The notes beneath the pieces were generated by a model. It saw nothing but the letters and a program-made list of their open reading frames with translations. It made no database searches and was not told where the DNA came from. The position numbers and the translations under genes are program-made. Below, one piece after another: positions 4,822 through 63,064 of a stretch of DNA of 64,000 nucleotides (its first letter is position 1; each line of letters opens with the position of its first letter). The DNA is taken from positions 109,182,001 through 109,246,000 of the forward strand of contig NC_043001.1 of the NCBI RefSeq assembly GCF_006345805.1. The letters run 5' to 3'. Source of the DNA: Octopus sinensis. Taxonomy: Eukaryota.

Positions 4822-4998
4822 TCGTTAGCCACTACACACATTTTTTTTTCTCCTTGTTTTTTCTGTGAACCTTTCTGTAGAAGAGCGTAGGCTCGAAACG
4901 TAAAAGACTTTTTCTATTCCTGAGCGTTATACCAATACATCTGTATGTTTTGTACACCACCTGTCTTCGTCTTTTGTTTTTTTCGTAAACTTTCCCTA
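4822..4998 (+). mobile_element. Penelope-like pseudo-LTR remnant (family 1)
   Basis: Hammerhead-like CTTT-CTGTAGA-AGAGCGTAGGCTC-GAAACGTA-AAAG at 4871-4906, plus conserved flanks (AGCCACTACACAC...). Confidence 0.6.
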
Positions 4999-7794: not shown

Positions 7795-7900
7795 GATAGA
7801 TCGGTAGCCACTACACACGTTTTTTTTCTCTCCTTGTTTCTTCCTGTGTTCCTTTCTGTAGAAGAGCGTAGGCTCGAAACGTAAAAGACTTTTTCAATTC
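7795..7900 (+). mobile_element. Penelope-like pseudo-LTR remnant (family 1), 3' truncated
   Basis: Same motif at 7852-7887. Confidence 0.55.
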
Positions 7901-12881: not shown

Positions 12882-13035
12882 TGTATACATACATATATAA
12901 ATATGTGTGTGTGTATGTATGTATGTATGTATGCATGTATGTATGTATATATATATATATATATTTGTAGACACACATAGATATATACGCACACACACAA
13001 ACACATACACACTCATATATTTATTTATATATATA

Positions 13036-14586: not shown

Positions 14587-14830
14587 GTGGAGCATAGTAT
14601 CTGTTCCCCACCTGGACGGGACGCCGGTCCGTCGCAGGTGAGCTGCACGACGCAGGAGGAAAGAGTGAGAGAAAGTTGTGGCGAAAGAGTCAGCAGAAGT
14701 TCGCCATCACCTTCTGCCGCAGCCGCGTGGAGATTAGGTGTTTCGCTCATAAACACACACATCGCCCGGTCTGAGATTCGAACCCGCGATCCTTCGACCG
14801 CGAATCCGCGAGCCTCCACTGGTTACAATA
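14587..14830 (-). mobile_element. SINE with a family C-like head and a different tail (CTGCGACGGACCGGCGTCCCGTCCAGG, V/Meta-domain-like)
   Basis: Minus strand has B-box GGTTCGAATC and a body similar to family C. Confidence 0.6.
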
Positions 14831-16246: not shown

Positions 16247-16430
16247 TGAAATTTTGAGAATTTCATGATTTTGAAAGTACAGTCGAATATAATTCGTCGA
16301 CAGTATATATTATAATTCGTCGACACTTCATCAACAGTTACGCATTTACAACTTCGGTTCATATCTCAGTTTCTGTTGAATACTGTATCTACGACTGGCA
16401 TTCGTGTTTTATCATCCTATGCTACACATT

Positions 16431-16794
16431 TGTGGAGGCGCAATGGCCCATGGTTAGGGCAGCGGACTCAAGGTCGTAGGATCGCAGTTTCGATTCCCAG
16501 ACCGGGCATTGTGAGTGTTTATTGAGCGAAAACACCCTGCAGGGGGTGGTGGTGAACCCTGCTGTACTCTTTCACCACAACTTTCTCTCACTCTTTCTTC
16601 CTGTTTCTGTTGTTCCTGTATTTCAAAGGGCCAGCCTTGTCACACTCTGTGTCACGCTGAATCTCCTCGAGAACTACGTTAAGGGTACACGTGTCTGTGG
16701 AGTGCTCAGCCACTTGCACGTTAATTCCACGAGCAAGCTGTTCCGTTGATCGTATCAGCTAGGACCCTCATCGTCGTAACCGACGGAGTGCTCC
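16431..16794 (+). mobile_element. tRNA-derived SINE, family C (GTGGAGGCGCAATGGCC head)
   Basis: Close match along its length to 22762-23148. Confidence 0.8.
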
Positions 16795-18274: not shown

Positions 18275-19018
18275 TATGAAGGGAGGAAACTGACAAGAGC
18301 TTGGGTGTGTGGGCTGCCACCCGGTAGAGAGCCCGAATGGATAGAAGACACTATCCGTCGGGGTCTGAGTGGCAGCACTGCCAGTCTCTTGAATGTCGGA
18401 ATTCTCCCTGTGGCTGATTGAATGGGGGGTCAAAAAGAATTTTGATCCTATGGACCCAATCAGCCAATGATCTGGTTTTGCCAGGTTTTTTAACAATGGC
18501 CGGTTCCAGCTACCCAGTGATCCTTGAGAGATGCCCCCCACCCAAATGTCACCTGTGCCTGGAATTGGGCCATATAAAGAGAAACTATCTCCGGGACCAA
18601 GCAAAGGTCCTGGAGCAGTTAATAGAAGAGCCCTCTGCTCCCCCATTGGAGGGAGAGAGGGAGAGAGTCGAGGGGTGGCAACCCCCTCGAAAAAGAAAGG
18701 AAAAAAAGAAAGAAGGTGGGCGACAATGGTTGCCAACCTATGGATCCTGAGGCGGCGGGAGGGAAGGAAGAACTTCCTGACATGAAGGAGGAACTCCACC
18801 CTCCCGTCGTAAAGGAGAAGAGAAAGAGGAGAAAGAAAAAGAATGGGACATCACCGGCGGTTGATGGTGAACTGTCGGCATGCCCGGAAACTTTGTCGGT
18901 GGGAAGTGTACCACCGACAGAGGAAATTGAGGCCCCTCCCAGAAGGAGGAAAGATGATTTTGTCATCTTCTTCCAGAAGAGTGGAGCAATGCAGATTTCT
19001 TCAAGGAATACCAGATAA
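18275..19018 (+). pseudogene. LINE ORF1 (L1/Tx1-like) fragment with RRM-like segment and zinc knuckle
   Basis: GRKLTRAWVCGLPP..., then CHLCLELGHIKRNY (Cx2Cx4Hx4C with the last C changed to Y, 18547-18588), then a Lys/Arg-rich region; GC-rich relative to flanks; interrupted by a stop and frameshifts. Confidence 0.55.
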
Positions 19019-20189: not shown

Positions 20190-20260
20190 ATCTTTCTATG
20201 TATCTCCTTCACACACTCTCTATTTCTCTCTCTATATATATGTATATACGTATGTATGCA

Positions 20261-20355
<95 letters not shown>

Positions 20356-21712
20356 CGCCACTAAAGTGAACAAGGGCGCTAATCAGCACCAGTATTGCTA
20401 GAAATAAGAGTCAAAACAATTCAACAGCCAACAGAAGCACTATCTTAATGAGCTGACAAGGGAGACAATCTCCCAGTCGTCGTATGTAGAGCTTGTTCCT
20501 CCTTGTCATCTCATTAAAATGGTGAGTTGGATATCTGCGATTAATTTGGCTGTCAAAACTTAATCACCTTTCCATTATTTACTCTCACCGAGTATTTTTC
20601 AGCCGATTTTTAATCCTTGTCGTTTGAAGTTACAATCTCGCAGAGTGTAATGAACTTGCCATTTATCTGAGTTGTCAGGAGAACCGTTAGAAATGAAATT
20701 CATTTTTTCAATCAGCGCATATATTTTCCGAAAGCGATCGATCAATCGATTGCGAAGAGCACAAGCTCATGCACGGGGCATGCATGCTTTCCTTCGGCTA
20801 ACGAGACAGCAACGGAGACCGAGCTTCCATAAAGTGCCTGCGAGCGGGTGGGTAGACGAGGTCGCCGGAAGGCGAGGACGGGCGAAGTGATGACGATGTC
20901 GTCGAGACAGATGCGAGGATTCCAAGCGTGCGAAAGAGCGAACGAACCAGATGCTGTCGGTGATGTGTACAGAAGTGACAGACGGGTACGCACCCGATGC
21001 AAAATATGAATTTACTTTTCACATTTCTCTTCGTTCTATTTTCTACCAGGTATTATATATTTTATAACCTCTTTTATGCCTTTACTCTTTTACTTATGTA
21101 TCTGTTGTGTGTTATCGGAAAACCACAAATGATAGTTATTCGTGTAAATTTAAGAGGATAAAACATCCTCCGTTCACGAACACATCACATAAGTTTCAGC
21201 TATGTTAAATCACTGGCAACTTCAACCTCTCTGCCATTCGGCTTTTTAAGATGACTAACTGTCATTATAGAAAGATTTAGCTGTTATTTCTAATAGGCAA
21301 GCATCCGTGTAGTGGCCATATTTAATTGCTCGATTTCTCTTTCGCAGTGTATAGCATCTGCTTACCTGCTTATACAAAATACTATTTGTTTAGCAAAGAA
21401 TTGTCCAACTATATAATAATGTATGAAACAGTATCTAATTATTGTCTAAAATTTCCATGTCTAGACTAGTTATAAAATGATGGATTAGCTATTTTCAGCT
21501 GTTTCACTGTATTTCGGTATGTTAATGAATTAACTGATAGTATTTGAAAGATAGAATTTAATTAAATACAACTTTCTAGAAAATTTTCGATGTAACTGTC
21601 ACTTTTTTGAAATTTAGTACATTACACGCAATATTAAAGTTTATTACTGAGTAAGATGAGATAATGGAAGCCCGTATACTATACGAACTATATTGTAATA
21701 ATTTATAGTAAA

Positions 21713-21926
21713 AATAATCTATTTTAATAATTTATTATTAATAATCTATTTTAATAATTTATTATTAATAATCTATTTTAATAATTTATTATTAATAATC
21801 TATTTTAATAATTTATTATTAATAATCTATTTTAATAATTCATTATTAATAATCTATTTTAATAATTTATTATTAATATTCTATTTTAATAATTTATTAT
21901 TAATAATCTATTTTAATAATTTATTA
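21713..21926. repeat. 27 bp AT-rich minisatellite, ~8 copies (AATAATCTATTTTAATAATTTATTATT)
   Basis: Unit starts at 21713, 21740, 21767 ... 21902. Confidence 0.9.
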
Positions 21927-22199
21927 GTTTGCATATTACTATCCTTCATCTAGTATCGTTGTTTTGTTTAGTTACAAGGTCAGACTTGGTGGTATAGATC
22001 CACCATCTAATGCCTACATCATGTGTGCTTTTTTCAGTCATGATATATACATAGACATGCAGGAAGTAAATAGACACCTTTAATTTTCAAAATTTCTGAT
22101 CTAAGCGTCTTGAAATGTTGTCAGCAGTGTAGAATTTACAATGTAATTATTCATTTTCATTCCAGGTGCCAGTATATTAAACATTTGCGAAGAGCAACA

Positions 22200-22358
22200 A
22201 TGCTACGCACAAAGAATTCAGTAGAACTGTCAGATTTTCAAAGAGGTCGTATTGTTGGGTAATCTGAGGCTGGTCTTAGCCAGCGAAAAATTGCCGACAA
22301 TCTTGAAATTCCTCTTGCTACTGTTACTAGAAGGCTTCTGGCATTGCAAAACAGCTAG
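22200..22358 (+). pseudogene. Tc1-like transposase N-terminal HTH fragment
   Basis: [43 protein letters not shown] resembles the Tc1 ELSDFERGRIVG motif; in-frame TAA at 22260-62. Confidence 0.7.
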
Positions 22359-22524
22359 AAGTTAGTCCAAGTACGTGTGTTACGTAACTGCATAAGCTTG
22401 GGTATTATGGACGAGCAGCTAGAAGAAAATCTCTCCTTCAACCAATTAATATCAAATAAAAGATTTTGAAAATTCAAGGTGTCTATTTCCTTCTTGCATG
22501 TCTGTGCATATATATATTCGCCTT

Positions 22525-22728
22525 GTTGATTCGCTAGCTTCTGCACGCATTTTTTTTTCTCTTCTTGTTTCTCTCCGTGTTTCTTTTCTGTGACTCTTTC
22601 TGATGAAGAGCGTAGGCTCGAAACGTAAAATACTTGTGTTATTTATATTCCTGAGCGCCATACTAATACAATTGTTTGTTTGTATTCCACCTGCCTTCGT
22701 CTTTTGTTTATTTTCATAAAGCTTCCCG

Positions 22729-22730
<2 letters not shown>
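22525..22730 (+). mobile_element. Penelope-like pseudo-LTR remnant (family 1)
   Basis: Shares GAAGAGCGTAGGCTCGAAACGT and flanks with copies at ~4822, ~7795, ~56395 and ~56915. Minimal hammerheads are a known hallmark of Penelope pLTRs. Confidence 0.6.
22597..22630 (+). ncRNA. Minimal type I hammerhead motif in a Penelope-like terminal repeat (family 1)
   Basis: UUU-CUGAUGA-A-GAGC GUAG GCUC-GAAAC GUA/AAA: canonical core, one extra A before a 4-bp helix II, palindromic ACGU helix III, only 3 bp of helix I. Confidence 0.6.
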
Positions 22731-22761
<31 letters not shown>

Positions 22762-23148
22762 TGTGGAGGCGCAATGGCCCAGTGGTTAGGGCAGCGGACT
22801 CGCGGTCATAGGATCGCGGTTTCGATTCCCAGACCGGGCTTTGTGAGTGTTTATTGAGCGAAAACACCTAAAAGCTCCACGAGGCTCCGGCAGGGGATGG
22901 TGGTGATCCCTGCTGTACTCTTTCACCACAGCTTTCTCTCACTCTTACTTCCTGTTTCTGTTGTACCTGTATTTCAAAGGGCCGGCCTTGTCACTCTCTG
23001 TGTCACGCTGAATATCCCCGAGAACTACGTTAAGGGTACACGTGTCTGTGGAGTGTTCAGCCACTTACACGTTAATTTCACGAGCAGGCTGTTCCGTTGA
23101 TTCGGATCAACCGGAACCTTCATCGTCGTAACCGACGGAGTGCTTCCA
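22762..23148 (+). mobile_element. tRNA-derived SINE, family C
   Basis: A-box TGGCCCAGTGG, B-box-like GTTTCGATTCC; close match to the 16431 copy. Confidence 0.8.
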
Positions 23149-23696: not shown

Positions 23697-23823
23697 TTAC
23701 ATTATTTACATCTGACGGATAATTGTCCACATCTTGTTTGTTGTTAACACAATGTTTCGGCTGATATCCAACAAATGTAAATAATGTAAATAATGTTCAT
23801 AATTCCTCATCTCTTAAATATAG
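23697..23823. mobile_element. Penelope-like pLTR family 2 fragments in inverted arrangement
   Basis: TTTGTTGTTAACACAATGTTTCGGCTGATA matches the 46240 copy; CATAATTCCTCATCTCTTAAATATAG matches the reverse complement of ~46204-46229. Confidence 0.55.
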
Positions 23824-24048
23824 GATCAGTTAATGTAGTTTGGGAGTACAGATTATACCAATCTAGTAAGGCAATTAATATACTTGAATTAGTATGCTGA
23901 TGTGTTGAGTAAAGCACTAGCACAGTTTGGGCTACCTGGTGTAATCGGCACTCGGAGTATATTTCTTTTGGCTCTACTCCAGGAATTCTGAAGTGTTAGT
24001 TGATGTAATAATAAGTAAACAGAAGATGGAATTGCAATAACTCTTTAT

Positions 24049-24153
24049 TTTCTTACTGATGAATCTAAGGGCCTATGGTAGATTGGCTTGATTTAATTTA
24101 ATCAGGTTAGTTTACCATTAAACAGTAGATGAAACGGTGCATCGTATAAGAAA
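24049..24153 (+). ncRNA. Type I hammerhead ribozyme, unit 1 (predicted cleavage after A24146)
   Basis: Helix I UUUCUUA (24049-55)/UAAGAAA (24147-53); core CUGAUGA (24056-62); helix II base AUCUA (24063-67)/UAGAU (24126-30) enclosing a 19-bp hairpin; GAAA (24131-34); helix III ACGG/UCGU with UGCA loop; GUA triplet (24144-46). Confidence 0.9.
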
Positions 24154-24539
24154 TTACAGGGTAAATGTTTTTTTAATTTTCTCCTGGTTTACGGAATTGA
24201 TGTTATTTTGCGGTTGAAGCTTTTGGCTGTTATTTCTAGTGGGTGAATGGCCTATTATGGCCGTTCTTTGATTGTGATGTTGAACTTAAAAATGGTCTAT
24301 GACTATTTAATTTTTCTCCCACTAGGCCGCTGGTGGCAAAAAAATTCTACAAAATTTTTTGCCACCCTATATTGATTAATTATGAATTTTCTGGTTAATT
24401 CCGTAATGGAATCGGCGGCTTATATTTATTTGCTGCCGATAAATTTGGCGCGTGTGCGATGATTTGAAAATTTTAGGTCAGATATTGCCGAGGCAGGGAC
24501 GGGAATGCCTCGTGAAAAATATCTGTTCCGACTTGGCTA

Positions 24540-24644
24540 TTTCTTACTGATGAATCTAAGGGCCTATGGTAGATTGGCTTGATTTAATTTAATCAGGTTA
24601 GTTTACCATTAAACAGTAGATGAAACGGTGCATCGTATAAGAAA
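24540..24644 (+). ncRNA. Type I hammerhead ribozyme, unit 2 (cleavage after A24637)
   Basis: Same motif as unit 1; helix I extends to 8 bp (AUUUCUUA/UAAGAAAU). Confidence 0.9.
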
Positions 24645-25031
24645 TTACAGGGTAAATGTTTTTTTAATTTTCTCCTGGTTTACGGAATTGATGTTATTTT
24701 GCGGTTGAAGCTTTTGGCTGTTATTTCTAGTGGGTGAATGGCCTATTATGGCCGTTCCTTGATTGTGATGTTGAACTTAAAAATGGTCTATGAATATTTA
24801 ATTTTTTCCCACTAGGCCGCTGGTGGCAAAAAAAAATTCTACAAAATTTTTTGCCACCCTATATTGATTAATTATGAATTTTCTGGTTAATTCCGTAATG
24901 GAATCGGCGGCTTATATTTATTTGCTGCCGATAAATTTGGCGCGAGTGCGATGATTTGAAAATTTTAGGTCAGATATTGCCGAGGCAGGGACGGGAATGC
25001 CTCGTGAAAAATATCTGTTCCGACTTGGCTA

Positions 25032-25136
25032 TTTCTTACTGATGAATCTAAGGGCCTATGGTAGATTGGCTTGATTTAATTTAATCAGGTTAGTTTACCA
25101 TTAAACAGTAGATGAAACGGTGCATCGTATAAGAAA
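25032..25136 (+). ncRNA. Type I hammerhead ribozyme, unit 3
   Basis: Core and helices intact. Confidence 0.9.
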
Positions 25137-25524
25137 TTACAGGGTAAATGTTTTTTAATTTTCTCCTGGTTTACGGAATTGATGTTATTTTGCGGTTGAA
25201 GCTTTTGGCTGTTATTTCTAGTGGGTGAATGGCCTATTATGGCCGTTCCTTGATTGTGATGTTGAACTTAAAAATGGTCTATGACTATTTAATTTTTTCC
25301 CACTAGGCCGCTGGTGGCAAAAAAATTCTACAAAATTTTTTGCCACCCTATATTGATTAATTATGAATTTTCTGGTTAATTCCGTAATGGAATCGGCGGC
25401 TTATATTTATTTGCTGCCGATAAATTTGGCGCGAGTGCGATGATTTGAAAATTTTAGGTCAGATATTGCCGAGCAGGGACGGGACGGGAATGCCTCGTGA
25501 AAAATATCTGTTCCGACTTGGCTA

Positions 25525-25629
25525 TTTCTTACTGATGAATCTAAGGGCCTATGGTAGATTGGCTTGATTTAATTTAATCAGGTTAGTTTACCATTAAACA
25601 GTAGATGAAACGGTGCATCGTATAAGAAA
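25525..25629 (+). ncRNA. Type I hammerhead ribozyme, unit 4
   Basis: Core and helices intact. Confidence 0.9.
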
Positions 25630-26016
25630 TTACAGGGTAAATGTTTTTTTAATTTTCTCCTGGTTTACGGAATTGATGTTATTTTGCGGTGTTGAAGCTT
25701 TTGGCTGTTATTTCTAGTGGGTGAATGGCCTATTATGGCCGTTCCTTGATTGTGATGTTGAACTTAAAAATGGTCTATGAATATTTAATTTTTTCCCACT
25801 AGGCCGCTGGTGGCAAAAAAAATTCTACAAAATTTTTTGCCACCCTATATTGATTAATTATGAATTTTCTGGTTAATTCCGTAATGGAATCGGCGGCTTA
25901 TATTATTTGCTGCCGATAAATTTGGCGCGAGTGCGATGATTTGAAAATTTTAGGTCAGATATTGCCGAGGCAGGGACGGGAATGCCTCGTGAAAAATATC
26001 TGTTCCGACTTGGCTA

Positions 26017-26120
26017 TTTCTTACTGATGAATCTAAGGCCTATGGTAGATTGGCTTGATTTAATTTAATCAGGTTAGTTTACCATTAAACAGTAGATGAA
26101 ACGGTGCATCGTATAAGAAA
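26017..26120 (+). ncRNA. Type I hammerhead ribozyme, unit 5
   Basis: Core intact; one G fewer in the helix II internal loop. Confidence 0.88.
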
Positions 26121-26506
26121 TTACAGGGTAAATGTTTTTTTAATTTTCTCCTGGTTTACGGAATTGATGTTATTTTGCGGTTGAAGCTTTTGGCTGTTAT
26201 TTCTAGTGGGTGAATGGCCTATTATGGCCGTTCCTTGATTGTGATGTTGAACTTAAAAATGGTCTATGACTATTTAATTTTTTTCCCACTAGGCCGCTGG
26301 TGGCAAAAAAATTCTACAAAATTTTTTGCCACCCTATATTGATTAATTATGAATTTTCTGGTTAATTCCGTAATGGAATCGGCGGCTTATATTTATTTGC
26401 TGCCGATAAATTTGGCGCGAGTGCGATGATTTGAAAATTTTAGGTCAGATATTGCCGAGGCAGGGACGGGAATGCCTCGTGAAAAATATCTGTTCCGACT
26501 TGGCTA

Positions 26507-26611
26507 TTTCTTACTGATGAATCTAAGGGCCTATGGTAGATTGGCTTGATTTAATTTAATCAGGTTAGTTTACCATTAAACAGTAGATGAAACGGTGCAT
26601 CGTATAAGAAA
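26507..26611 (+). ncRNA. Type I hammerhead ribozyme, unit 6
   Basis: Core and helices intact. Confidence 0.9.
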
Positions 26612-26997
26612 TTACAGGGTAAATGTTTTTTTAATTTTCTCTGGTTTACGGAATTGATGTTATTTTGCGGTTGAAGCTTTTGGCTGTTATTTCTAGTGGG
26701 TGAATGGCCTATTATGGCCGTTCCTTGATTGTGATGTTGAACTTAAAAATGGTCTATGATATTTAATTTTTTCCCACTAGGCCGCTGGTGGCAAAAAAAA
26801 ATTCTACAAAAATTTTTTGCCACCCTATATTGATTAATTATGAATTTTCTGGTTAATTCCGTAATGGAATCGGCGGCTTATATTTATTTGCTGCCGATAA
26901 ATTTGGCGCGAGTGCGATGATTTGAAAATTTTAGGTCAGATATTGCCGAGGCAGGGACGGGAATGCCTCGTGAAAAATATCTGTTCCGACTTGGCTA

Positions 26998-27102
26998 TTT
27001 CTTACTGATGAATCTAAGGGCCTATGGTAGATTGGCTTGATTTAATTTAATCAGGTTAGTTTACCATTAAACAGTAGATGAAACGGTGCATCGTATAAGA
27101 AA
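26998..27102 (+). ncRNA. Type I hammerhead ribozyme, unit 7
   Basis: Core and helices intact. Confidence 0.9.
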
Positions 27103-27489
27103 TTACAGGGTAAATGTTTTTTTAATTTTCTCCTGGTTTACGGAATTGATGTTATTTTGCGGTTGAAGCTTTTGGCTGTTATTTCTAGTGGGTGAATGGC
27201 CTATTATGGCCGTTCCTTGATTGTGATGTTGAACTTAAAAATGGTCTATGACTATTTAATTTTTCCCACTAGGCCGCTGGTGGCAAAAAAATTCTACAAA
27301 ATTTTTTGCCACCCTATATTGATTAATTATGAATTTTCTGGTTAATTCCGTAATGGAATCGGCGGCTTATATTTATTTGCTGCCGATAAATTTGGCGCGA
27401 GTGCGATGATGATTTGAAAATTTTAGGTCAGATATTGCCGAGGCAGGGACGGGAATGCCTCGTGAAAAATATCTGTTCCGACTTGGCTA

Positions 27490-27595
27490 TTTCTTACTGA
27501 TGAATCTAAGGGCCTATGGTAGATTGGCTTGATTTAATTTAATCAGGTTAGTTTACCATTAAACAGTAGATGAAACGTGTGCATCGTATAAGAAA
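27490..27595 (+). ncRNA. Type I hammerhead ribozyme, unit 8
   Basis: Core intact; an extra T in helix III (GAAACGTGTGCATCGTA), possibly a sequencing error. Confidence 0.82.
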
Positions 27596-27980
27596 TTACA
27601 GGGTAAATTTTTTTTAATTTTACTGGTTTACGGAATTGATGTTATTTTGCGGTTGAAGCTTTTGGCTGTTATTTCTAGTGGGTGAATGGCCTATTATGGC
27701 CGTTCCTTGATTGTGATGTTGAACTTAAAAATGGTCTATGATATTTAATTTTTTCCCACTAGGCCGCTGGTGGCAAAAAAAAATTCTACAAAATTTTTTG
27801 CCACCCTATATTGATTAATTATGAATTTTCTGGTTAATTCCGTAATGGAATCGGCGGCTTATATTTATTTGCTGCCGATAAATTTGCGGCGCGAGTGCGA
27901 TGATTTGAAAATTTTAGGTCAGATATTGCCGAGGCAGGGACGGGAATGCCTCGTGAAAAATATCTGTTCCGACTTGGCTA

Positions 27981-28085
27981 TTTCTTACTGATGAATCTAA
28001 GGGCCTATGGTAGATTGGCTTGATTTAATTTAATCAGGTTAGTTTACCATTAAACAGTAGATGAAACGGTGCATCGTATAAGAAA
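27981..28085 (+). ncRNA. Type I hammerhead ribozyme, unit 9
   Basis: Core and helices intact. Confidence 0.9.
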
Positions 28086-28473
28086 TTACAGGGTAAATGT
28101 TTTTTTAATTTTCTCCTGGTTTACGGAATTGATGTTATTTTGCGGTTGAAGCTTTTGGCTGTTATTTCTAGTGGGTGAATGGCCTATTATGGCGTTCCTT
28201 GATTGTGTGATGTTGAACTTAAAAATGGTCTATGAATATTTAATTTTTTCCCACTAGGCCGCTGGTGGCAAAAAAAAATTCTACAAAATTTTTTGCCACC
28301 CTATATTGATTAATTATGAATTTTCTGGTTAATTCCGTAATGGAATCGGCGGCTTATATTTATTTGCTGCCGATAAATTTGGCGCGAGTGCGATGATTTG
28401 AAAATTTTAGGTCAGATATTGCCGAGGCAGGGACGGGAATGCCTCGTGAAAAATATCTGTTCCGACTTGGCTA

Positions 28474-28577
28474 TTTCTTACTGATGAATCTAAGGGCCTA
28501 TGGTAGATTGGCTTGATTTAATTTAATCAGGTTAGTTTACCATTAACAGTAGATGAAACGGTGCATCGTATAAGAAA
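28474..28577 (+). ncRNA. Type I hammerhead ribozyme, unit 10
   Basis: Core intact; one A fewer in the helix II internal loop. Confidence 0.88.
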
Positions 28578-28962
28578 TTACAGGGTAAATGTTTTTTTAA
28601 TTTCTCTCCTGGTTTACGGAATTGATGTTATTTTGCGGTTGAAGCTTTTGGCTGTTTTTCTAGTGGGTGAATGGCCTATTATGGCCGTTCCTTGATTGTG
28701 ATGTTGAACTTAAAAATGGTCTATGACTATTTAATTTTTTCCCACTAGGCTGCTGGTGGCAAAAAAATTCTACAAAATTTTTTGCCACCCTATATTGATT
28801 AATTATGAATTTTCTGGTTAATTCCGTAATGGAATCGGCGGCTTATATTTATTTGCTGCCGATAAATTTGGCGCGAGTGCGATGATTTGAAAATTTTAGG
28901 TCAGATATTGCCGAGGCAGGGACGGGAATGCCTCGTGAAAAATATCTGTTCCGACTTGGCTA

Positions 28963-29067
28963 TTTCTTACTGATGAATCTAAGGGCCTATGGTAGATTGG
29001 CTTGATTTAATTTAATCAGGTTAGTTTACCATTAAACAGTAGATGAAACGGTGCATCGTATAAGAAA
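28963..29067 (+). ncRNA. Type I hammerhead ribozyme, unit 11
   Basis: Core and helices intact. Confidence 0.9.
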
Positions 29068-29451
29068 TTACAGGTAAATGTTTTTTTAATTTTCTCCTGG
29101 TTTACGGAATTGATGTTATTTTGCGGTTGAAGCTTTTGGCTGTTATTTCTAGTGGGTGAATGGCCTATTATGGCCGTTCCTTGATTGTGCTGTTGAACTT
29201 AAAAATGGTCTATGACTATTTAATTTTTTTCCCACTAGGCCGCTGGTGGCAAAAAAATTCTACAAAATTTTTTGCCACCCTATATTGATTAATTATGAAT
29301 TTTCTGGTTAATTCCGCAATGGAATCGGCGGCTTATATTTATTTGCTGCCGATAAATTTGGCGCGAGTGCGATGATTTGAAAATTTTAGGTCAGATATTG
29401 CCGAGGCAGGGACGGGAATGCCTCGTGAAAAAATCTGTTCCGACTTGGCTA

Positions 29452-29554
29452 TTTCTTACTGATGAATCTAAGGGCCTATGGTAGATTGGCTTGATTTAAT
29501 TTAATCAGGTTAGTTACCATTAACAGTAGATGAAACGGTGCATCGTATAAGAAA
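29452..29554 (+). ncRNA. Type I hammerhead ribozyme, unit 12
   Basis: Core intact; two single-base homopolymer losses in the helix II extension. Confidence 0.85.
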
Positions 29555-29942
29555 TTACAGGGTAAATGTTTTTTTAATTTTCTCCTGGTTTACGGAATTG
29601 ATGTTATTTTGCGGTTGAAGCTTTTGGCTGTTATTTCTAGTGGGTGAATGGCCTATTATGGCCGTTCCGTTCTGATTGTGATGTTGAACTTAAAAATGGT
29701 CTATGACTATTTAATTTTTTCCCACTAGGCCGCTGGTGGCAAAAAAATTCTACAAAATTTTTTGCCACCCTATATTGATTAATTATGAATTTTCTGGTTA
29801 ATTCCGTAATGGAATCGGCGGCTTATATTTATTTCCTGCCGATAAATTTGGCGCGAGTGCGATGATTTGAAAATTTTAGGTCAGATATTGCCGAGGCAGG
29901 GACGGGAATGCCTCGTGAAAAATATCTGTTCCGACTTGGCTA

Positions 29943-30047
29943 TTTCTTACTGATGAATCTAAGGGCCTATGGTAGATTGGCTTGATTTAATTTAATCAGG
30001 TTAGTTTACCATTAAACAGTAGATGAAACGGTGCATCGTATAAGAAA
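29943..30047 (+). ncRNA. Type I hammerhead ribozyme, unit 13 (last, partial unit)
   Basis: Core and helices intact; the unit is truncated at 30275 by a (TA)n tract. Confidence 0.9.
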
Positions 30048-30272
30048 TTACAGGGTAAATGTTTTTTTAATTTTCTCCTGGTTTACGGATTGATGTTATT
30101 TTGCGGTTGAAGCTTTTGGCTGTTATTTCTAGTGGGTGAATGGCCTATTATGGCCGTTCCTTGATTGTGATGTTGAACTTAAAAATGGTCTATGACTATT
30201 TAATTTTTTCCCACTAGGCCGCTGGTGGCAAAAAAATTCTACAAAATTTTTTGCCACCCTATATTGATTAAT

Positions 30273-30365
<93 letters not shown>

Positions 30366-30908
30366 AAGAGAGGGGGAGAAAGAAATGGATATATATAAAA
30401 TGAGAGTGACATATACATACACATATACATGTGTCCATGTATGAGTGTGTGTGTGTGTGTGTGTGTGCATAGGTCTATATGTGCGCATATGTGTATATGC
30501 GTTCGTATGTTTGATATCGATGATTGATTTAACAGTAGCAAATTTTACACTCAGGAAGCGATTTAAAAGTCATAACCATCAATTTAACATTGAAATCTCT
30601 CCTCTTTATTATTCTATATCTTTTATCATCTCTTATGTATTGCTTAGTGACTGATTGCTGGTTACCATATATATATTAGTTTTGATAAACTATAAGTACG
30701 CTGTTATTAATGTACGTCCTCTTAATATGCCATTGAAATATAATATTCGTGCTATTAATGATAATATCGTACGAGTATTCATATCTTCATTATAAAATCG
30801 AAGAACACATATGTTCTTGCTTCGTGGTGAATCTTACGCTTTGATTCTATGTATCTATCTATCACCCTCTTTCTCCCTTCCTCACTCCTCTCTCTCTCTC
30901 TCTCTCTC

Positions 30909-31589: not shown

Positions 31590-31742
31590 GGAGAGAGAGA
31601 GAGAGAGAGCCATGTCTATGTATGTATGCATCTATGTATGCATGCATGTATGTATGTATATATATATGTATATATATATACATATATATATATTTATTTA
31701 TGTATGTATGTATATGTGTATGTATGCATGCATGTATGTATG

Positions 31743-31778
<36 letters not shown>

Positions 31779-40736: not shown

Positions 40737-40779
<43 letters not shown>

Positions 40780-40780
<1 letters not shown>

Positions 40781-42058
40781 TGCCGCCATTTTATATTTAT
40801 AATTTCACGCGTTCTCATTGTTTGTTTTTGATTTTGTCAACTACACAGTATTGTAGCGTCAGTTGCGCATCGTCAGTGAAAAAAAAAAACAGCACCATGA
40901 CGCAATTCAATCTGCCAGAAATTTGGAAACGACATGCTGTACTTCTTGGCATTCCCGCTGGAAGCTCCAATACGAACGTTTCAGAGGCTTTGTGTGTCAA
41001 TCGGAGGACAGTGCAGAGGATTCGGAAAAAGTTGGATGAGTCTAATTGGATGAGCTTAATTGTGATTACGAAGGCACGGCTGCTCAGAAAAAAACTCATT
41101 CTGATTGTTCTGATAAGAAAAGAACTCGTGAATTTGTTGGTGAGATCCAGGCCAGGATGGACAACGATCCCGCCAAATCAATCAGATATTTCGCTAAGGA
41201 TAAGAGGGTGTTCGATTTCTACATTGGGGCGGTAGTGCATGACGACATTCGGTATTCCTCATACAATATGAGAAAGGGTCAAGTTTTATCGCAAGCCATC
41301 AAAGGCAAGAGGAAAGACCGCACTACGAAGCTTTTGAACAAACCCAAGCATCCGCCCCCAACCGAACGTTCTTTGGTTTTCCTCAGACGAGAAAAATTTC
41401 TGTCAGGATCAGAACACACAGAACAACCGTTGGCTTGCTGTGTACCCAAAATATGTACCCAAAATGATACAAATCAAACATCTAGTCAACATCATGGTGT
41501 TTGGAGTGATCACTAGTGATGGCAACGTTATACCTCCATTCATTTTCCCACGCGGCCTCAGACACAACACTGAGGGCTAGATCAAGTGCTTGGAGGTCAA
41601 GAGGGTGGCTGCTGGAAACCGTATGTCTGGCAACGAGACTACACAGTTCCACGCAAACAGGAAAAATGCAGTCATGCCTGACAGATAATTTCTGCGACTA
41701 CAGCACCCCTAACATATAGTCACCTAACTCCCCAGTCTTCAACCCCCTTGCTTATTGTGTGTGGGGGCAGTTACACGAGAGACCAACAAAGCTCCTTGTA
41801 ACACTAAAGATGAAGGCAAAGATTACGGCAGCATTCACGAACTTAAACAAGGAGACCGTCAAGAAGAGTTGCAGAAGATTCGGGAGTCTTCCCGAGGCCG
41901 TGGTTGAAGGCAATGGCGATTTCATTGAATATGTTTACTCTTTCGTATTTCAAAATATTTTTATGTAATTTTTAGTAAATATATCTGTAAAAATAAGATG
42001 TTAATGTCATTTCCATTTTTGTGTAATTTAGACGATAATTTATTCACCGCACCCAGTG
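40780..42058 (+). mobile_element. Defective maT-like DNA transposon
   Basis: Contains the pseudogene above; TIR-like right end TAATTTATTCACCGCACCCAGTG at ~42036-42058; left TIR not found (replaced by (TA)n). Confidence 0.65.
40897..41968 (+). pseudogene. Tc1/mariner-superfamily transposase pseudogene, DD37D (maT-like)
   Basis: HTH region (VNRRTVQRIRKKL), WFSSDEKNF, NTQNNRW, IMVFGVITSDG, VWQRD, SPNSPVFNPLAY, EAVVEGNGDFIE. D2-to-D3 distance is 113 nt versus 114 expected for DD37D. Several frameshifts and stops. Confidence 0.82.
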
Positions 42059-46199: not shown

Positions 46200-46325
46200 G
46201 AGTTCTATATTTGAGAGATGAGGAATTATGTAGATTTTGTTTGTTGTTAACACAACATTTTGGCTGATATACTCTCCAGCCTTCATCAGGTGTGTTGGGG
46301 AAATTTCGAACCGGGGTATCATTTT
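46200..46325 (-). mobile_element. Penelope-like pLTR remnant (family 2) with a decayed minimal hammerhead at 46250-46293
   Basis: Minus strand reads ACAC-CUGAUGA-A-GGCUG GAGAGUAUAU CAGCC-AAAAU-GUU-GUGU; helices I and II are intact but GAAAC has become AAAAU. Confidence 0.6.
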
Positions 46326-56394: not shown

Positions 56395-57252
<858 letters not shown>

Positions 57253-61758: not shown

Positions 61759-63064
61759 TTGGATCATCCCATAAATAATGCGTTTTTTATACTTCTTTTA
61801 TTTATCAAAATTAAGATAAAAGTCTCTTTAAATCTTATATATATTCTCTATCATTTTCTATTATGCTCTTCAATCTAGCTGGTATATCTTTCTTTATGAG
61901 TTCAGTAGATGCTCCTCTTCCAAAATTCACTTGTCCGTGACAAAAAATACTCCACCAGTACTGTTCTCACCTCGTCTATAGAATTCATATTTTTTCCGTA
62001 CAAATGATTATGAAGACTGCGGAACAAATGACAAAGAGATGAGGCAATGTCCGGTGAATATTGTGGGTGGGGCATCGTTTCCCATTGGAAAGCACCAGCC
62101 ATTGGAATGTCATCCTTGCTGTATGTGGCCAAGCATTATCCTGATGGAAGAATACCTTTCGTCTTGAAACCAAAGATGGTCGTTTTTCTTCTAGCTCTGA
62201 CTTAAGCTGCTCAAACTGCTCGCATGAGATCTCCTTTGTTATCGTTTGGTTTAGGTTTTAAAGTTCAAAGTAGACTAAATCTTTCATATCCCACCAAACA
62301 GATAATAACAATTTACGTGGGTGAAGACCATCTTTAGCCTGGGTTGCCAGTGTTTCTCCTTTACTTACCCGCTGGTTTCAGTGCTTGACATTTTGTATAG
62401 AGAACCTATTTCTCGTCACCAGACACTATTCGATCCCCAAAATGTTCATTCGTGAGACAAGGCAACAAAGAACACAATTTCACACTCTGTGTGCAATTAG
62501 ACTGGGAAAGTTTGTGAAGAATCCATTGACGCAATTTGCTGACTTTTCCGATGGCACCCGGGTGTCGATAAATGGCTGAAAGACCGAATCCAAGCTTCTC
62601 TGCTAGTTTCTCAACAGTTACGACGAGATTTTGTCCCGCCAGGGTTTGCAGGATGTCCTCGTCGAGTTCTATAGATCTTCTAGGACGATGCTCGTCTTTT
62701 AGGCTATAGTTTCCGGCTCGGAATTTCTGGAACCACCGTTAACATTGGCTTACACTTATTGTCATATCCCCATATACTACATTAATATTCCTTGCACTTT
62801 CCGTTGCATTATTGCATTTTTATAACTCATAAAGCAATATATACCGAATATGCTCCTGAATTACTTCTATTGCAGCTTTGAAAAAATATCTGCTAAAATC
62901 GAACTGCACTCTTTAAAACTTGCACTAAGAATAAATACAAAGTAAAATTACTACCTGCTTTTATAGCAAATTGATGCAGGTATTTTGTCCCCTCCCGCTC
63001 CGACTTTTACCTTTAGTTAGTGCATGAAAAAAAAAAAAAAACCGTATTATTTTGGGATGACCTT
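61759..63064 (-). mobile_element. Full-length (~1.3 kb) defective mariner transposon, DD34D class
   Basis: Imperfect ~30 bp TIRs (TTGGATCATCCCATAAATAATGCG / CCGTATTATTTTGGGATGACCTT) flanked by TA; encloses a mariner transposase pseudogene. Confidence 0.88.
61830..62870 (-). pseudogene. Mariner transposase pseudogene
   Basis: Motifs WFQKFRAG, WILHKL (WVPHEL-like), VSGDEK, FHQDNA, YSPDIASS. D2-to-D3 distance is 104 nt versus 105 expected for DD34D. Start codon mutated to ATA; stops and frameshifts present. Confidence 0.88.

What the first reader, a model, noticed from the sequence alone, without database searches (positions are those of the whole stretch)
24049..30275. Tandem array of 13 hammerhead ribozymes: a candidate cephalopod retrozyme / self-cleaving satellite
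Seen: what looks like a plain 491 bp satellite carries in every unit all elements of a type I hammerhead: a 7-8 bp helix I, CUGAUGA, a closed helix II, GAAA, helix III and a GUA site. All 13 copies keep the core. Established: hammerhead-bearing tandem repeats (newt satellite 2, schistosome Sm-alpha, Dolichopoda pDo500, metazoan non-LTR retrozymes) are transcribed as multimers, self-cleave to monomers and can circularise; they are thought to be mobilised by autonomous retroelements such as Penelope-like elements. Inference: a + strand transcript would be cut after A24146, A24637 and so on into ~491 nt non-coding monomers, larger than the roughly 170-400 nt I recall as typical for animal retrozymes. 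I cannot confirm whether this family has been reported in cephalopods.
Basis: partly seen in the sequence, partly recalled or inferred. Interest (0 to 1): 0.96.

Follow-up and report, generated by a model that had tools for sequence, protein, structure and literature searches.

The report
Hammerhead-ribozyme tandem repeat (retrozyme-like satellite)
A 6.2-kb stretch of non-coding DNA repeats a 491-base unit 13 times, and each unit carries a complete self-cutting "hammerhead" RNA motif, so it looks like one more member of the known animal family of self-cleaving satellites (retrozymes), with cutting and circular RNA still untested.

Summary
Window 24049-30279 is a 491-bp tandem array (12.7 copies, 98% identical). 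Every unit carries, on the + strand only, a full type I hammerhead: 7-8 bp helix I, CUGAUGA, a closed 68-nt helix II, GAAA, a 4-bp helix III and a GUA site. My descriptor finds exactly these 13 sites in the window. Random sequence of the same composition gives 1.2e-3 such motifs per Mb, or about 1e-6 per repeat unit.

The unit is non-coding, 36-37% GC and strongly self-paired, which matches published metazoan non-LTR retrozymes and hammerhead satellites. Two domains are predicted to fold into a double hammerhead with a 12-bp shared helix III, as in newt satellite 2.

Against it:
- The 10.1-11.1 pair is A-U instead of G-C.
- I found no relatives, transcripts or Penelope-like element.
- A cephalopod origin could not be verified.
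- 491 nt is not exceptional (pDo500 is about 500 bp; published consensus lengths run 51-972 bp).

Verdict: a new member of a known kind, of moderate interest.

The parts
24049..30279 (+). Tandem array of the 491-bp non-coding unit: 12 full units of 489-493 bp plus a 3'-truncated 13th unit
   Evidence: TRF gives period 491, 12.7 copies, 98% matches. GC is 0.36-0.37 with GC skew +0.2.
24049..24153 (+). Hammerhead 1. Helix I is 7 bp because its 5' neighbour is flank DNA. Predicted cut 3' of A24146.
   Evidence: Descriptor hit, stems 7/5/4 bp; sequence.
24539..24645 (+). Hammerhead 2, the reference copy. Helix I 24539-24546 / 24638-24645; CUGAUGA 24547-24553; helix II 24554-24621; GAAA 24622-24625; helix III 24625-24636; cut 3' of A24637.
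   Evidence: The canonical hammerhead fold is -31.9 kcal/mol against an MFE of -33.8.
25031..25137 (+). Hammerhead 3, cut 3' of A25129
25524..25630 (+). Hammerhead 4, cut 3' of A25622
26016..26121 (+). Hammerhead 5, cut 3' of A26113. One G is deleted in the helix II internal loop.
26506..26612 (+). Hammerhead 6, cut 3' of A26604
26997..27103 (+). Hammerhead 7, cut 3' of A27095
27489..27596 (+). Hammerhead 8, cut 3' of A27588. A T insertion in helix III (ACGUGUGCAUCGU) leaves 3 bp there.
27980..28086 (+). Hammerhead 9, cut 3' of A28078
28473..28578 (+). Hammerhead 10, cut 3' of A28570. One A is deleted in the helix II internal loop.
28962..29068 (+). Hammerhead 11, cut 3' of A29060
29451..29555 (+). 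Hammerhead 12, cut 3' of A29547. Two 1-nt deletions in helix II.
29942..30048 (+). Hammerhead 13, in the truncated last unit; cut 3' of A30040
24566..24609 (+). Distal extension of helix II in the reference unit: a 19-bp hairpin with 5 G-U pairs and a 6-nt loop. This is the part that makes helix II unusually long.
   Evidence: Fold (25 pairs in helix II, 5 of them G-U).
24625..24636 (+). Quasi-palindromic helix III segment ACGGUGCAUCGU. It is a marginal hairpin on its own (-0.1 kcal/mol) but forms a 12-bp duplex with the same segment of another unit (-17.5 kcal/mol), giving a double hammerhead.
30273..30318 (.). (TA)23 microsatellite abutting the truncated 3' end of the array, followed by (GA)n at 30321-30383
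   Evidence: junction read.

Best explanation
The locus is a tandem array of a 491-bp non-coding repeat of the hammerhead-satellite / metazoan non-LTR retrozyme kind.

Shown by sequence: each unit encodes, on the + strand only, a complete type I hammerhead with an unusually long helix II (68 nt).

Inferred mechanism:
1. The array is transcribed as a + strand multimer. RNA polymerase III is unlikely, because T7 and T6 runs sit inside each unit.
2. Neighbouring hammerheads pair through their quasi-palindromic helix III segments into double hammerheads, or each folds singly.
3. Each hammerhead cuts 3' of the A of GUA (A24146, A24637 and so on). This releases 487-493-nt monomers with 5'-OH and 2',3'-cyclic phosphate ends.
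4. The released monomer refolds into a compact, branched structure. Part of the catalytic core (UGAUG) is then paired with CAUCG, which switches the ribozyme off.
5. By analogy with characterised retrozymes, a host tRNA ligase would circularise the monomer. A reverse transcriptase supplied in trans, proposed in the literature to come from Penelope-like elements, could copy the circle into new tandem DNA.

Steps 1 to 5 are inference. Only the motif, the array and the predicted folds are shown.
For: - Array: period 491, 12.7 copies, 98% identical.
- Motif: all conserved core positions are present in all 13 units (C3 U4 G5 A6 U7 G8 A9, G12 A13 A14, A15.1-U16.1, A17), with helices of 7-8, 5 (+20 distal) and 4 bp in type I topology, on the + strand only.
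- Chance: 1.2e-3 motifs of this quality per Mb of composition-matched random sequence, about 1e-6 per unit. None occurs elsewhere in the window.
- Single fold: the canonical hammerhead fold is within 1.9 kcal/mol of the MFE of the isolated domain.
- Double hammerhead: two domains co-fold into a textbook double hammerhead with a 12-bp intermolecular helix III and unpaired cores, at -81.1 against 2 x -33.8 kcal/mol. The MFE of a 599-nt cis dimer pairs the two helix III segments in the same way.
- Monomer RNA: strongly structured, -155.8 kcal/mol, z = -6.5, 62% paired as a circle.
- Coding capacity: no stop-free stretch longer than 60 aa in any frame, and no protein homologue.
- Composition: GC 36-37%.
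- Copy variation: 0 of 16 substitutions between copies fall in the 106-nt hammerhead domain (P=0.02). The 5 indels there lie only in helices II and III, never in the core or helix I.
- Literature match: type I hammerheads in 150-450-bp, <45-50% GC tandem repeats are expressed as highly self-paired circular RNAs, including in a mollusc (PMC7229834, PMC7761336). Roughly 500-bp pDo500 hammerhead repeats are known (PMC2837043). Palindromic stem/loop III allowing dimeric hammerheads occurs in repeat-type hammerheads (PMC3088659, Fig. S8 legend; PMC6155905).
Against: - No Rfam hammerhead model (type I, II, III, HH9, HH10) matches, at gathering score or at E<=10, even when only the 116-nt domain is searched.
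- The 10.1-11.1 pair is A-U. G-C there is the most conserved pair after 15.1-16.1 (PMC3088659), so catalysis may be slow.
- Helix III alone is only marginally stable (-0.1 kcal/mol), and the MFE of the isolated domain sequesters UGAUG of the core.
- No archetypal loop-loop tertiary motif could be recognised.
- There is no evidence of transcription, cleavage or circles.
- Only this one locus is available and no related sequence was found anywhere, so covariation cannot be tested.
- The 98% identity of the copies says nothing about selection.
- No target-site duplication was seen and no reverse transcriptase or Penelope-like element ORF lies in the window.
Confidence: 0.6

Rival explanations
1. 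Fossil motif. The repeat descends from a hammerhead-bearing element, but this array is now an ordinary, silent or non-cleaving satellite. It would have been amplified by unequal crossing-over, with the motif kept only because the copies are young.
For: Copies are 98% identical, so an intact core in all 13 is expected without selection. The A10.1-U11.1 pair, the marginal helix III and the competing core-sequestering fold could all lower activity. No Rfam hit. No expression data. One end of the array is truncated at a microsatellite, and no target-site duplication was seen.
Against: Every conserved core position and all three helices are intact. No substitution between copies falls in the hammerhead domain (weak). 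The predicted double hammerhead is very favourable. Natural hammerheads with non-G-C 10.1-11.1 pairs are active (PMC3088659, PMC2837043).
Confidence: 0.25
2. Chance resemblance. This is an ordinary AT-rich satellite whose unit happens to contain CUGAUGA, GAAA and complementary flanks.
For: A genome of several Gb would hold a handful of chance motifs of this quality: 1.2e-3 per Mb per strand is roughly 7-12 in 3-5 Gb. Rfam does not recognise the motif.
Against: The expected number in a given 491-bp unit is about 1e-6, and 1.5e-4 per window. The motif sits in the genomic context, a low-GC tandem repeat of a few hundred bp, where real animal hammerheads are found. The quasi-palindromic helix III and the internal loop 5 bp into helix II match known hammerhead features that the descriptor did not ask for.
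Confidence: 0.04
3. Part of an autonomous Penelope-like element. The array would be a run of pseudo-LTR / terminal repeats of such an element, not a separate non-autonomous element.
For: Penelope-like elements carry hammerheads in their pseudo-LTRs, form partial tandems and insert preferentially into microsatellites such as (TA)n (PMC8557442). The array ends at a (TA)23 run. A 2026 preprint relates retrozymes to these pseudo-LTRs (10.64898/2026.07.22.740005).
Against: No reverse transcriptase or GIY-YIG reading frame was seen among the stop-free segments of the window. Hammerheads of Penelope-like elements are usually minimal and lack helix III (PMC6155905), whereas this one has a 4-bp helix III and a long helix II. 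The 12 uniform 491-bp units contain no ORF.
Confidence: 0.06

Closest known systems
Metazoan non-LTR retrozymes (Cervera & de la Pena 2020, PMC7229834), e.g. the Mytilus galloprovincialis 350-390-bp repeats
   Same: Both have a type I hammerhead once per unit of a head-to-tail tandem repeat of a few hundred bp. Both have low GC (<45-50%), no LTR, PBS, PPT or ORF, and a predicted highly self-paired monomer RNA. The mussel hammerheads also lack the archetypal loop 1 / loop 2 nucleotides.
   Different: The unit is 491 bp, against ~170-400 nt in that paper, although it lies within the 51-972 bp of the 2026 preprint. Helix II is 68 nt instead of a short capped stem. The 10.1-11.1 pair is A-U. Expression, circular RNA and genome-wide copy number are unknown here. 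No sequence similarity could be tested.
Newt / salamander satellite 2 and axolotl retrozymes (about 330-350 bp)
   Same: Both are tandem satellites with a type I hammerhead whose weak helix III is capped by a palindromic tetraloop, so two motifs in a multimer form a double hammerhead with an extended helix III (PMC6155905, PMC7229834). Here UGCA caps a 4-bp stem, and the predicted dimer has a 12-bp helix III.
   Different: Helix III here is 4 bp, against 1-2 bp in amphibians, so single-motif cleavage is also plausible. Helix II is much longer. The host is different.
Dolichopoda cave-cricket pDo500 satellite (PMC2837043)
   Same: Both are roughly 500-bp satellite units with one embedded hammerhead. 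Single and double hammerhead models have been proposed for pDo500. Variation at the 10.1/11.1 pair is tolerated there through compensatory changes.
   Different: For pDo500, conservation and compensatory changes were shown across 12 species and self-cleavage was shown in vitro. Nothing comparable is available here. The pDo500 hammerhead is compact (49-68 nt) against 105-107 nt here.
Schistosoma Sm-alpha hammerhead repeat
   Same: Both are type I hammerheads in a repeated, non-coding, SINE-like or satellite element of an invertebrate.
   Different: Sm-alpha has a short helix II whose loop contacts an internal loop in helix I, and it cleaves very fast as a monomer (PMC6155905). No such contact can be recognised here.
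Minimal hammerheads of Penelope-like elements and Terminons
   Same: These are type I topology hammerheads associated with retroelements. Some act as dimers. They are the proposed helpers of retrozymes (PMC7761336).
   Different: Those motifs usually lack helix III and tertiary contacts, and they sit next to an RT-GIY-YIG ORF. Neither applies here.

Membership tests
Hammerhead ribozyme, type I | Conserved core C3-U4-G5-A6-N7-G8-A9 and G12-A13-A14 | tested here: met
   CUGAUGA and GAA are present and correctly placed in all 13 units.
Hammerhead ribozyme, type I | A15.1-U16.1 pair followed by a non-G position 17 (the cleavage site) | tested here: met
   GAAA...GUA|U: A15.1 pairs with U16.1, and position 17 is A in all 13 units.
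Hammerhead ribozyme, type I | Three helices radiating from the core, with helix I open and helices II and III closed | tested here: met
   Helix I is 7-8 bp. Helix II is 5 bp plus a 20-bp distal part. Helix III is 4 bp (3 in unit 8). The fold is 1.9 kcal/mol above the MFE.
Hammerhead ribozyme, type I | G10.1-C11.1 closing pair of helix II (highly conserved, not absolute) | tested here: not met
   The pair is A10.1-U11.1 in all copies. Published natural variants at this pair are active (PMC3088659, PMC2837043).
Hammerhead ribozyme, type I | Match to the Rfam hammerhead covariance models (a diagnostic, not a definition) | tested here: not met
   No hit at gathering score, nor at E<=10 on 1.3 kb or on the 116-nt domain. 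My untested explanation is the ~60-nt extension of helix II plus the A-U 10.1-11.1 pair.
Hammerhead ribozyme, type I | Tertiary contact between helix I and helix II peripheral elements | tested here: inconclusive
   An internal loop lies 5 bp into helix II and helix I ends after 8 bp, which is compatible geometry. A 4-bp GGCC/GGCU pairing with the 5' tail is possible by eye but not significant.
Hammerhead ribozyme, type I | Covariation that maintains helices I-III among homologues | tested here: inconclusive
   No homologues were found. The 13 copies differ too little: 0 substitutions in the domain.
Hammerhead ribozyme, type I | Mg2+-dependent self-cleavage 3' of position 17 | not testable with these tools
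   Needs in vitro transcription.
Metazoan non-LTR retrozyme / hammerhead satellite | Type I hammerhead once per unit of a short head-to-tail tandem repeat (150-450 bp in PMC7229834; 51-972 bp in 10.64898/2026.07.22.740005) | tested here: met
   Period 491, with 13 hammerheads in register.
Metazoan non-LTR retrozyme / hammerhead satellite | Low GC content (<45-50%) | tested here: met
   GC is 0.36-0.37.
Metazoan non-LTR retrozyme / hammerhead satellite | Non-coding, with no LTR | tested here: met
   The longest stop-free stretch is 60 aa and there is no protein homologue. The unit is a simple head-to-tail repeat with no terminal repeats. PBS and PPT motifs were not scanned for specifically.
Metazoan non-LTR retrozyme / hammerhead satellite | Monomer RNA predicted to be highly self-paired | tested here: met
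   MFE is -155.8 kcal/mol with z = -6.5. As a circle it is -150.0 kcal/mol and 62% paired. The - strand has the same z-score, so this is not strand-specific evidence.
Metazoan non-LTR retrozyme / hammerhead satellite | Expressed as linear and circular monomer RNA | not testable with these tools
   No transcriptome of the source organism is reachable.
Metazoan non-LTR retrozyme / hammerhead satellite | Dispersed in several loci, with co-occurring Penelope-like elements in the genome | tested here: inconclusive
   There is no other copy of the unit in the 64-kb window. No RT/GIY-YIG frame was seen. Two hammerhead look-alikes in the window fail the core test. The rest of the genome is not available.
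Pseudo-LTR hammerhead of a Penelope-like element | Located in the terminal repeat of an element that encodes RT and GIY-YIG endonuclease | tested here: not met
   No such ORF lies in or beside the array, or anywhere in the window's stop-free segments. Those segments were read by eye and not scanned against Pfam.
Plant LTR retrozyme | Type III hammerheads in two LTRs, with PBS, PPT and GC >55% | tested here: not met
   The topology is type I, the structure is a 13-mer tandem, and GC is 36%.

The most novel reading that the evidence does not exclude
Its hammerhead carries a ~60-nt G-U-rich hairpin extension of helix II, which hides it from the Rfam models. The family would then stand for a class of self-cleaving circular-RNA elements that standard annotation misses systematically. 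The long hairpin might have a second role, such as a double-stranded RNA-binding protein or editing substrate, or a small-RNA source.
Probability: 0.2. Interest if true: 0.6.

Novelty: new member of a known kind. Interest (0 to 1): 0.4.

Why it matters
If the RNA cleaves and circularises, the locus adds a new host lineage and an unusually large helix II to the animal retrozymes. These elements can make up a sizeable share of cellular RNA in some animals, reportedly up to about 1% of total RNA in mussel tissues (PMC7229834). Their origin from Penelope-like elements is under current debate.

There is also a practical point. All five Rfam hammerhead models miss a motif whose core is perfect. Genome surveys based on Rfam will therefore undercount hammerhead satellites that have long peripheral helices, and descriptor-based searches are needed as well.

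If the RNA does not cleave, this is simply a young 491-bp satellite carrying a ribozyme relic.

Tried and rejected
1. Rfam scans found no hammerhead family: the whole window at gathering score and at E<=10, the first units, the domain alone, and the look-alike at 22450-22750. The many mir-297 / mir-3149 / mir-1277 sub-threshold hits are microsatellite artefacts.

2. I looked for relatives through translated ORFs. Seven stop-free pieces of the unit, joined into a 338-aa query against 5.8 billion proteins, gave no hit at E<=0.01.

3. I looked for relatives by DNA pattern. The 19-mer GATGAAACGGTGCATCGTA had 7 metagenome matches, none of them preceded by CTGATGA, and none in viral contigs. The bacterial/archaeal genome collection was not scanned because it is irrelevant here.

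4. Local BLAST of the unit against the rest of the window found nothing significant.

5. Organism identification failed. A mariner-like transposase query gave only two unnamed metagenome proteins. Exact look-ups of two window ORFs found nothing on record. ARAGORN found no tRNA. 'Cephalopod' remains unverified.

6. Literature searches found no paper in the library on hammerheads or retrozymes in cephalopods. Searches for the motif's own sequence found nothing.

7. I first took the motif at 22600 (CTGATGA-A-GAGCGTAGGCTC-GAAAC-GTA) for a minimal hammerhead of a Penelope-like element beside the array, and rejected that. It belongs to a 5-copy dispersed repeat whose consensus reads CTGTAGA, so A6 is lost. 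Helix I would be 3 bp, and Rfam does not match it.

8. I considered strand-specific structure as evidence for the + strand and rejected it. The + strand folds 44 kcal/mol better than the - strand, but its shuffles do too, and z = -6.5 on both strands.

9. I looked for a target-site duplication at the array ends by eye and found none.

Full report
**1. The observation**

Tandem Repeats Finder reports a single long-period array in the window: 24049-30279, period 491, 12.7 copies, 98% matches, 1% indels. Cutting at TTTCTTACTGATGA gives 12 complete units of 489-493 bp. A 13th unit breaks off about 330 bp in, where a (TA)23 and then a (GA)n microsatellite begin. On the left, the array starts within a few bases of the first TTTCTTA, against unrelated sequence.

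Every unit reads, on the + strand: (A)UUUCUUA - CUGAUGA - 68 nt closed by AUCUA/UAGAU - GAAA - CGG UGCA UCG - UA | UAAGAAA(U). In hammerhead numbering this gives:
- helix I of 7-8 bp
- C3-A9 (N7 = U)
- helix II
- G12 A13 A14
- A15.1-U16.1 closing a 4-bp helix III with a UGCA loop
- A17
- the 3' strand of helix I

The ends lie in helix I, so the topology is type I. A descriptor I wrote finds exactly 13 hits in the 64-kb window. All are in the array and on the + strand, and this holds even when the stems are relaxed to 3/3/1 bp. Position 17 falls at 24146, 24637, 25129, 25622, 26113, 26604, 27095, 27588, 28078, 28570, 29060, 29547 and 30040.

**2. Is it chance?**

In 3.3 Gb of random sequence with the unit's base composition, the descriptor found 4 motifs with stems >=7/5/4 bp. 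That is 1.2e-3 per Mb per strand. 12 Mb of first-order Markov sequence gave none with stems >=6/4/3 bp. The expectation is about 1.5e-4 for the window and about 1e-6 for one 491-bp unit on both strands.

A genome of several Gb would hold a handful of such chance motifs. Finding one inside the unit of a low-GC tandem repeat of a few hundred bp, the classic home of animal hammerheads, is not plausibly chance. The statement that all 13 copies keep the core adds little, since the copies are 98% identical.

**3. The proposed Rfam check fails**

No Rfam 15 family reaches its gathering score anywhere in the window. With permissive filters and E<=10, no hammerhead family appears on 23900-25200 or on the 116-nt domain alone.

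My explanation is inferred and not tested. The Rfam hammerhead models expect a short capped helix II, whereas this one carries a ~60-nt extension. The highly conserved G10.1-C11.1 pair is A-U here. I therefore file the motif as a hammerhead by descriptor, not by covariance model, and record the failed diagnostic in the membership table.

Published work shows that 10.1-11.1 is the most conserved pair after 15.1-16.1. It also shows that natural variants, even a U-U mismatch, are active (PMC3088659). Compensatory changes occur at this pair in the pDo500 satellite (PMC2837043).

**4. Predicted RNA behaviour**

For the isolated 107-nt domain:
- The canonical hammerhead fold costs -31.9 kcal/mol against an MFE of -33.8 kcal/mol.
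- The MFE keeps helices I and II but pairs UGAUG of the core with CAUCG of helix III. This is an 'off' state.
- Helix III is marginal as a hairpin (-0.1 kcal/mol).
- Its 12-nt segment ACGGUGCAUCGU is quasi-palindromic, and two copies form a 12-bp duplex of -17.5 kcal/mol.

Two domains co-fold into a textbook double hammerhead, with a shared 12-bp helix III, swapped helix I strands and both cores unpaired. The energy is -81.1 kcal/mol against 2 x -33.8. The MFE of a 599-nt transcript holding two consecutive hammerheads pairs the two helix III segments in the same way.

This is the behaviour described for newt satellite 2, axolotl retrozymes and other repeat-type hammerheads with palindromic stem/loop III (PMC6155905, PMC7229834, PMC3088659 Fig. 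S8 legend). The palindromic tetraloop alone is weak evidence, at roughly 1 in 7 by chance.

The full monomer is strongly structured: -155.8 kcal/mol, z = -6.5, and 62% paired as a circle. The - strand has the same z-score. The + strand's 44 kcal/mol advantage is explained by its G+U-rich composition, so I do not count it as strand-specific evidence.

**5. Other properties of the unit**

- No frame has a stop-free stretch above 60 aa, and the translated pieces have no homologue among 5.8 billion proteins.
- GC is 36-37%.
- T7 and T6 runs on the + strand would stop RNA polymerase III. This rests on established knowledge of Pol III termination. Multimeric transcripts would therefore need Pol II or read-through.
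- Among the 12 full copies there are 16 substitutions and 32 short indels, many of them in homopolymers and possibly sequencing errors. None of the substitutions falls in the 106-nt hammerhead domain (P=0.02). Five indels do, all in helices II or III. This is a weak hint of constraint at best.

**6. Surroundings**

The window is AT-rich eukaryotic DNA full of microsatellites, tRNA-derived SINE copies and Tc1/mariner remnants. I saw no reverse transcriptase or GIY-YIG frame among the stop-free segments.

Two hammerhead look-alikes outside the array do not hold up:
- The one at 22600 belongs to a 5-copy dispersed repeat whose consensus core is CUGUAGA.
- The one at 46283 (- strand) has A in place of G12.

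The array's truncated 3' end lies in the most TA-like part of the unit and abuts (TA)23. Penelope-like elements are reported to insert preferentially into microsatellites, including (TA)n (PMC8557442). The junction is therefore compatible with target-primed reverse transcription at a TA repeat, but this is only a suggestion. No target-site duplication was seen.

**7. Relatives and organism**

I could find no related sequence. The 19-mer hits in metagenomes are not preceded by CTGATGA, viral contigs have none, and the rest of the window has none. Covariation, the strongest computational test, therefore could not be done.

The source organism could not be identified, so 'cephalopod' is unverified. 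In the searchable library no paper reports hammerhead repeats or retrozymes in cephalopods, and none contains the motif's sequence.

**8. Comparison with what is known**

The locus matches the published description of metazoan non-LTR retrozymes. Those are type I hammerheads in 150-450-bp tandem repeats with GC below 45-50%, no LTR/PBS/PPT, and expression as highly self-paired linear and circular RNAs that a tRNA ligase circularises. Examples are known from a coral, a mussel and the axolotl, with Penelope-like elements as suspected helpers (PMC7229834, PMC7761336).

The size is not exceptional. pDo500 units are roughly 500 bp (PMC2837043), and a 2026 preprint gives consensus lengths of 51-972 bp (10.64898/2026.07.22.740005).

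What is unusual is the 68-nt helix II, the A-U 10.1-11.1 pair, and the resulting invisibility to Rfam.

**9. Verdict**

I put 0.6 on a genuine hammerhead repeat that self-cleaves (retrozyme-like). The alternatives are 0.25 for a relic motif in a now-ordinary satellite, about 0.06 for a pseudo-LTR array of a Penelope-like element, and 0.04 for chance.

It is a new member of a known kind, with interest 0.4.

Noticed in passing
window 4880-4900(+), 7861-7881(+), 22605-22625(+), 56493-56513(-), 56977-56997(+); roughly 170 bp conserved around each: A dispersed repeat family with 5 copies shares the exact 21-mer GAAGAGCGTAGGCTCGAAACG, which is the hairpin GAGC-GUAG-GCUC followed by GAAAC. Several copies (4880, 7861, 22605) directly follow a TA-rich microsatellite. 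The copy at 22600 reads like a minimal hammerhead (CTGATGA...GAAAC-GTA), but the family consensus is CTGTAGA and helix I would be only 3 bp. It is a look-alike, perhaps a SINE/LINE tail stem-loop.
   Followed up: partly
window 46225-46295(-) and 23735-23768(-): A second hammerhead look-alike reads CCCAACACAC-CTGATGA-AGGCTG...CAGCC-AAAA-TGTTGTGTT, with A where G12 should be. A related fragment, ATATCAGCCGAAACATTGTGTTAACAACAAACAA, lies about 280 bp left of the array. About 30 bp to its right lies a stretch that matches the same element in the opposite relative orientation, so the two pieces form an inverted arrangement. This could be a decayed retroelement terminus.
   Followed up: partly
window 22760-23140(+), 16430-16788(+), 14653-14822(-): A tRNA-derived SINE with Pol III A- and B-box-like head (GGCCCAGTGGTTAGGG ... 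GGTTTCGATTCCC) is present in three copies, 81-88% identical. ARAGORN calls none of them a tRNA.
   Followed up: partly
window 22043-22513; 40770-42000(+); 61905-62738(-): Tc1/mariner remnants. The first is a MITE-like piece with 58-nt inverted terminal repeats (86% complementary) enclosing a transposase N-terminal fragment. The other two are frameshifted transposase genes. The mariner-like one found only two unnamed metagenome proteins (53% and 71% identity).
   Followed up: partly
window 21691-21926: A separate AT-rich minisatellite has a 27-bp unit (TATTTTAATAATTTATTATTAATAATC), 8.7 copies, 95% matches. It lies 2.1 kb upstream of the array.
   Followed up: no
window 18418-18747(+): A 110-aa ORF carries a degenerate gag-type zinc knuckle (KCHLCLELGHIKRNY) and a basic tail. 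It overlaps a 211-aa ORF on the other strand and is probably a retroelement gag remnant.
   Followed up: no
whole window, e.g. 12911-12981, 31626-31774, 20244-20314: Dozens of sub-threshold Rfam 'microRNA' matches (mir-297, mir-3149, mir-1277, mir-466; 25-60 bits against gathering scores of 81-100) all sit on (TA)n/(CA)n-type microsatellites. They are low-complexity artefacts.
   Followed up: yes
window 24332-24366 and the same place in every unit: A perfect 12-bp hairpin, GGUGGCAAAAAA-loop-UUUUUUGCCACC, lies in the non-hammerhead part of the unit. Its A-run varies from 7 to 9 between copies. It scored weakly against unrelated Rfam hairpin families only.
   Followed up: no
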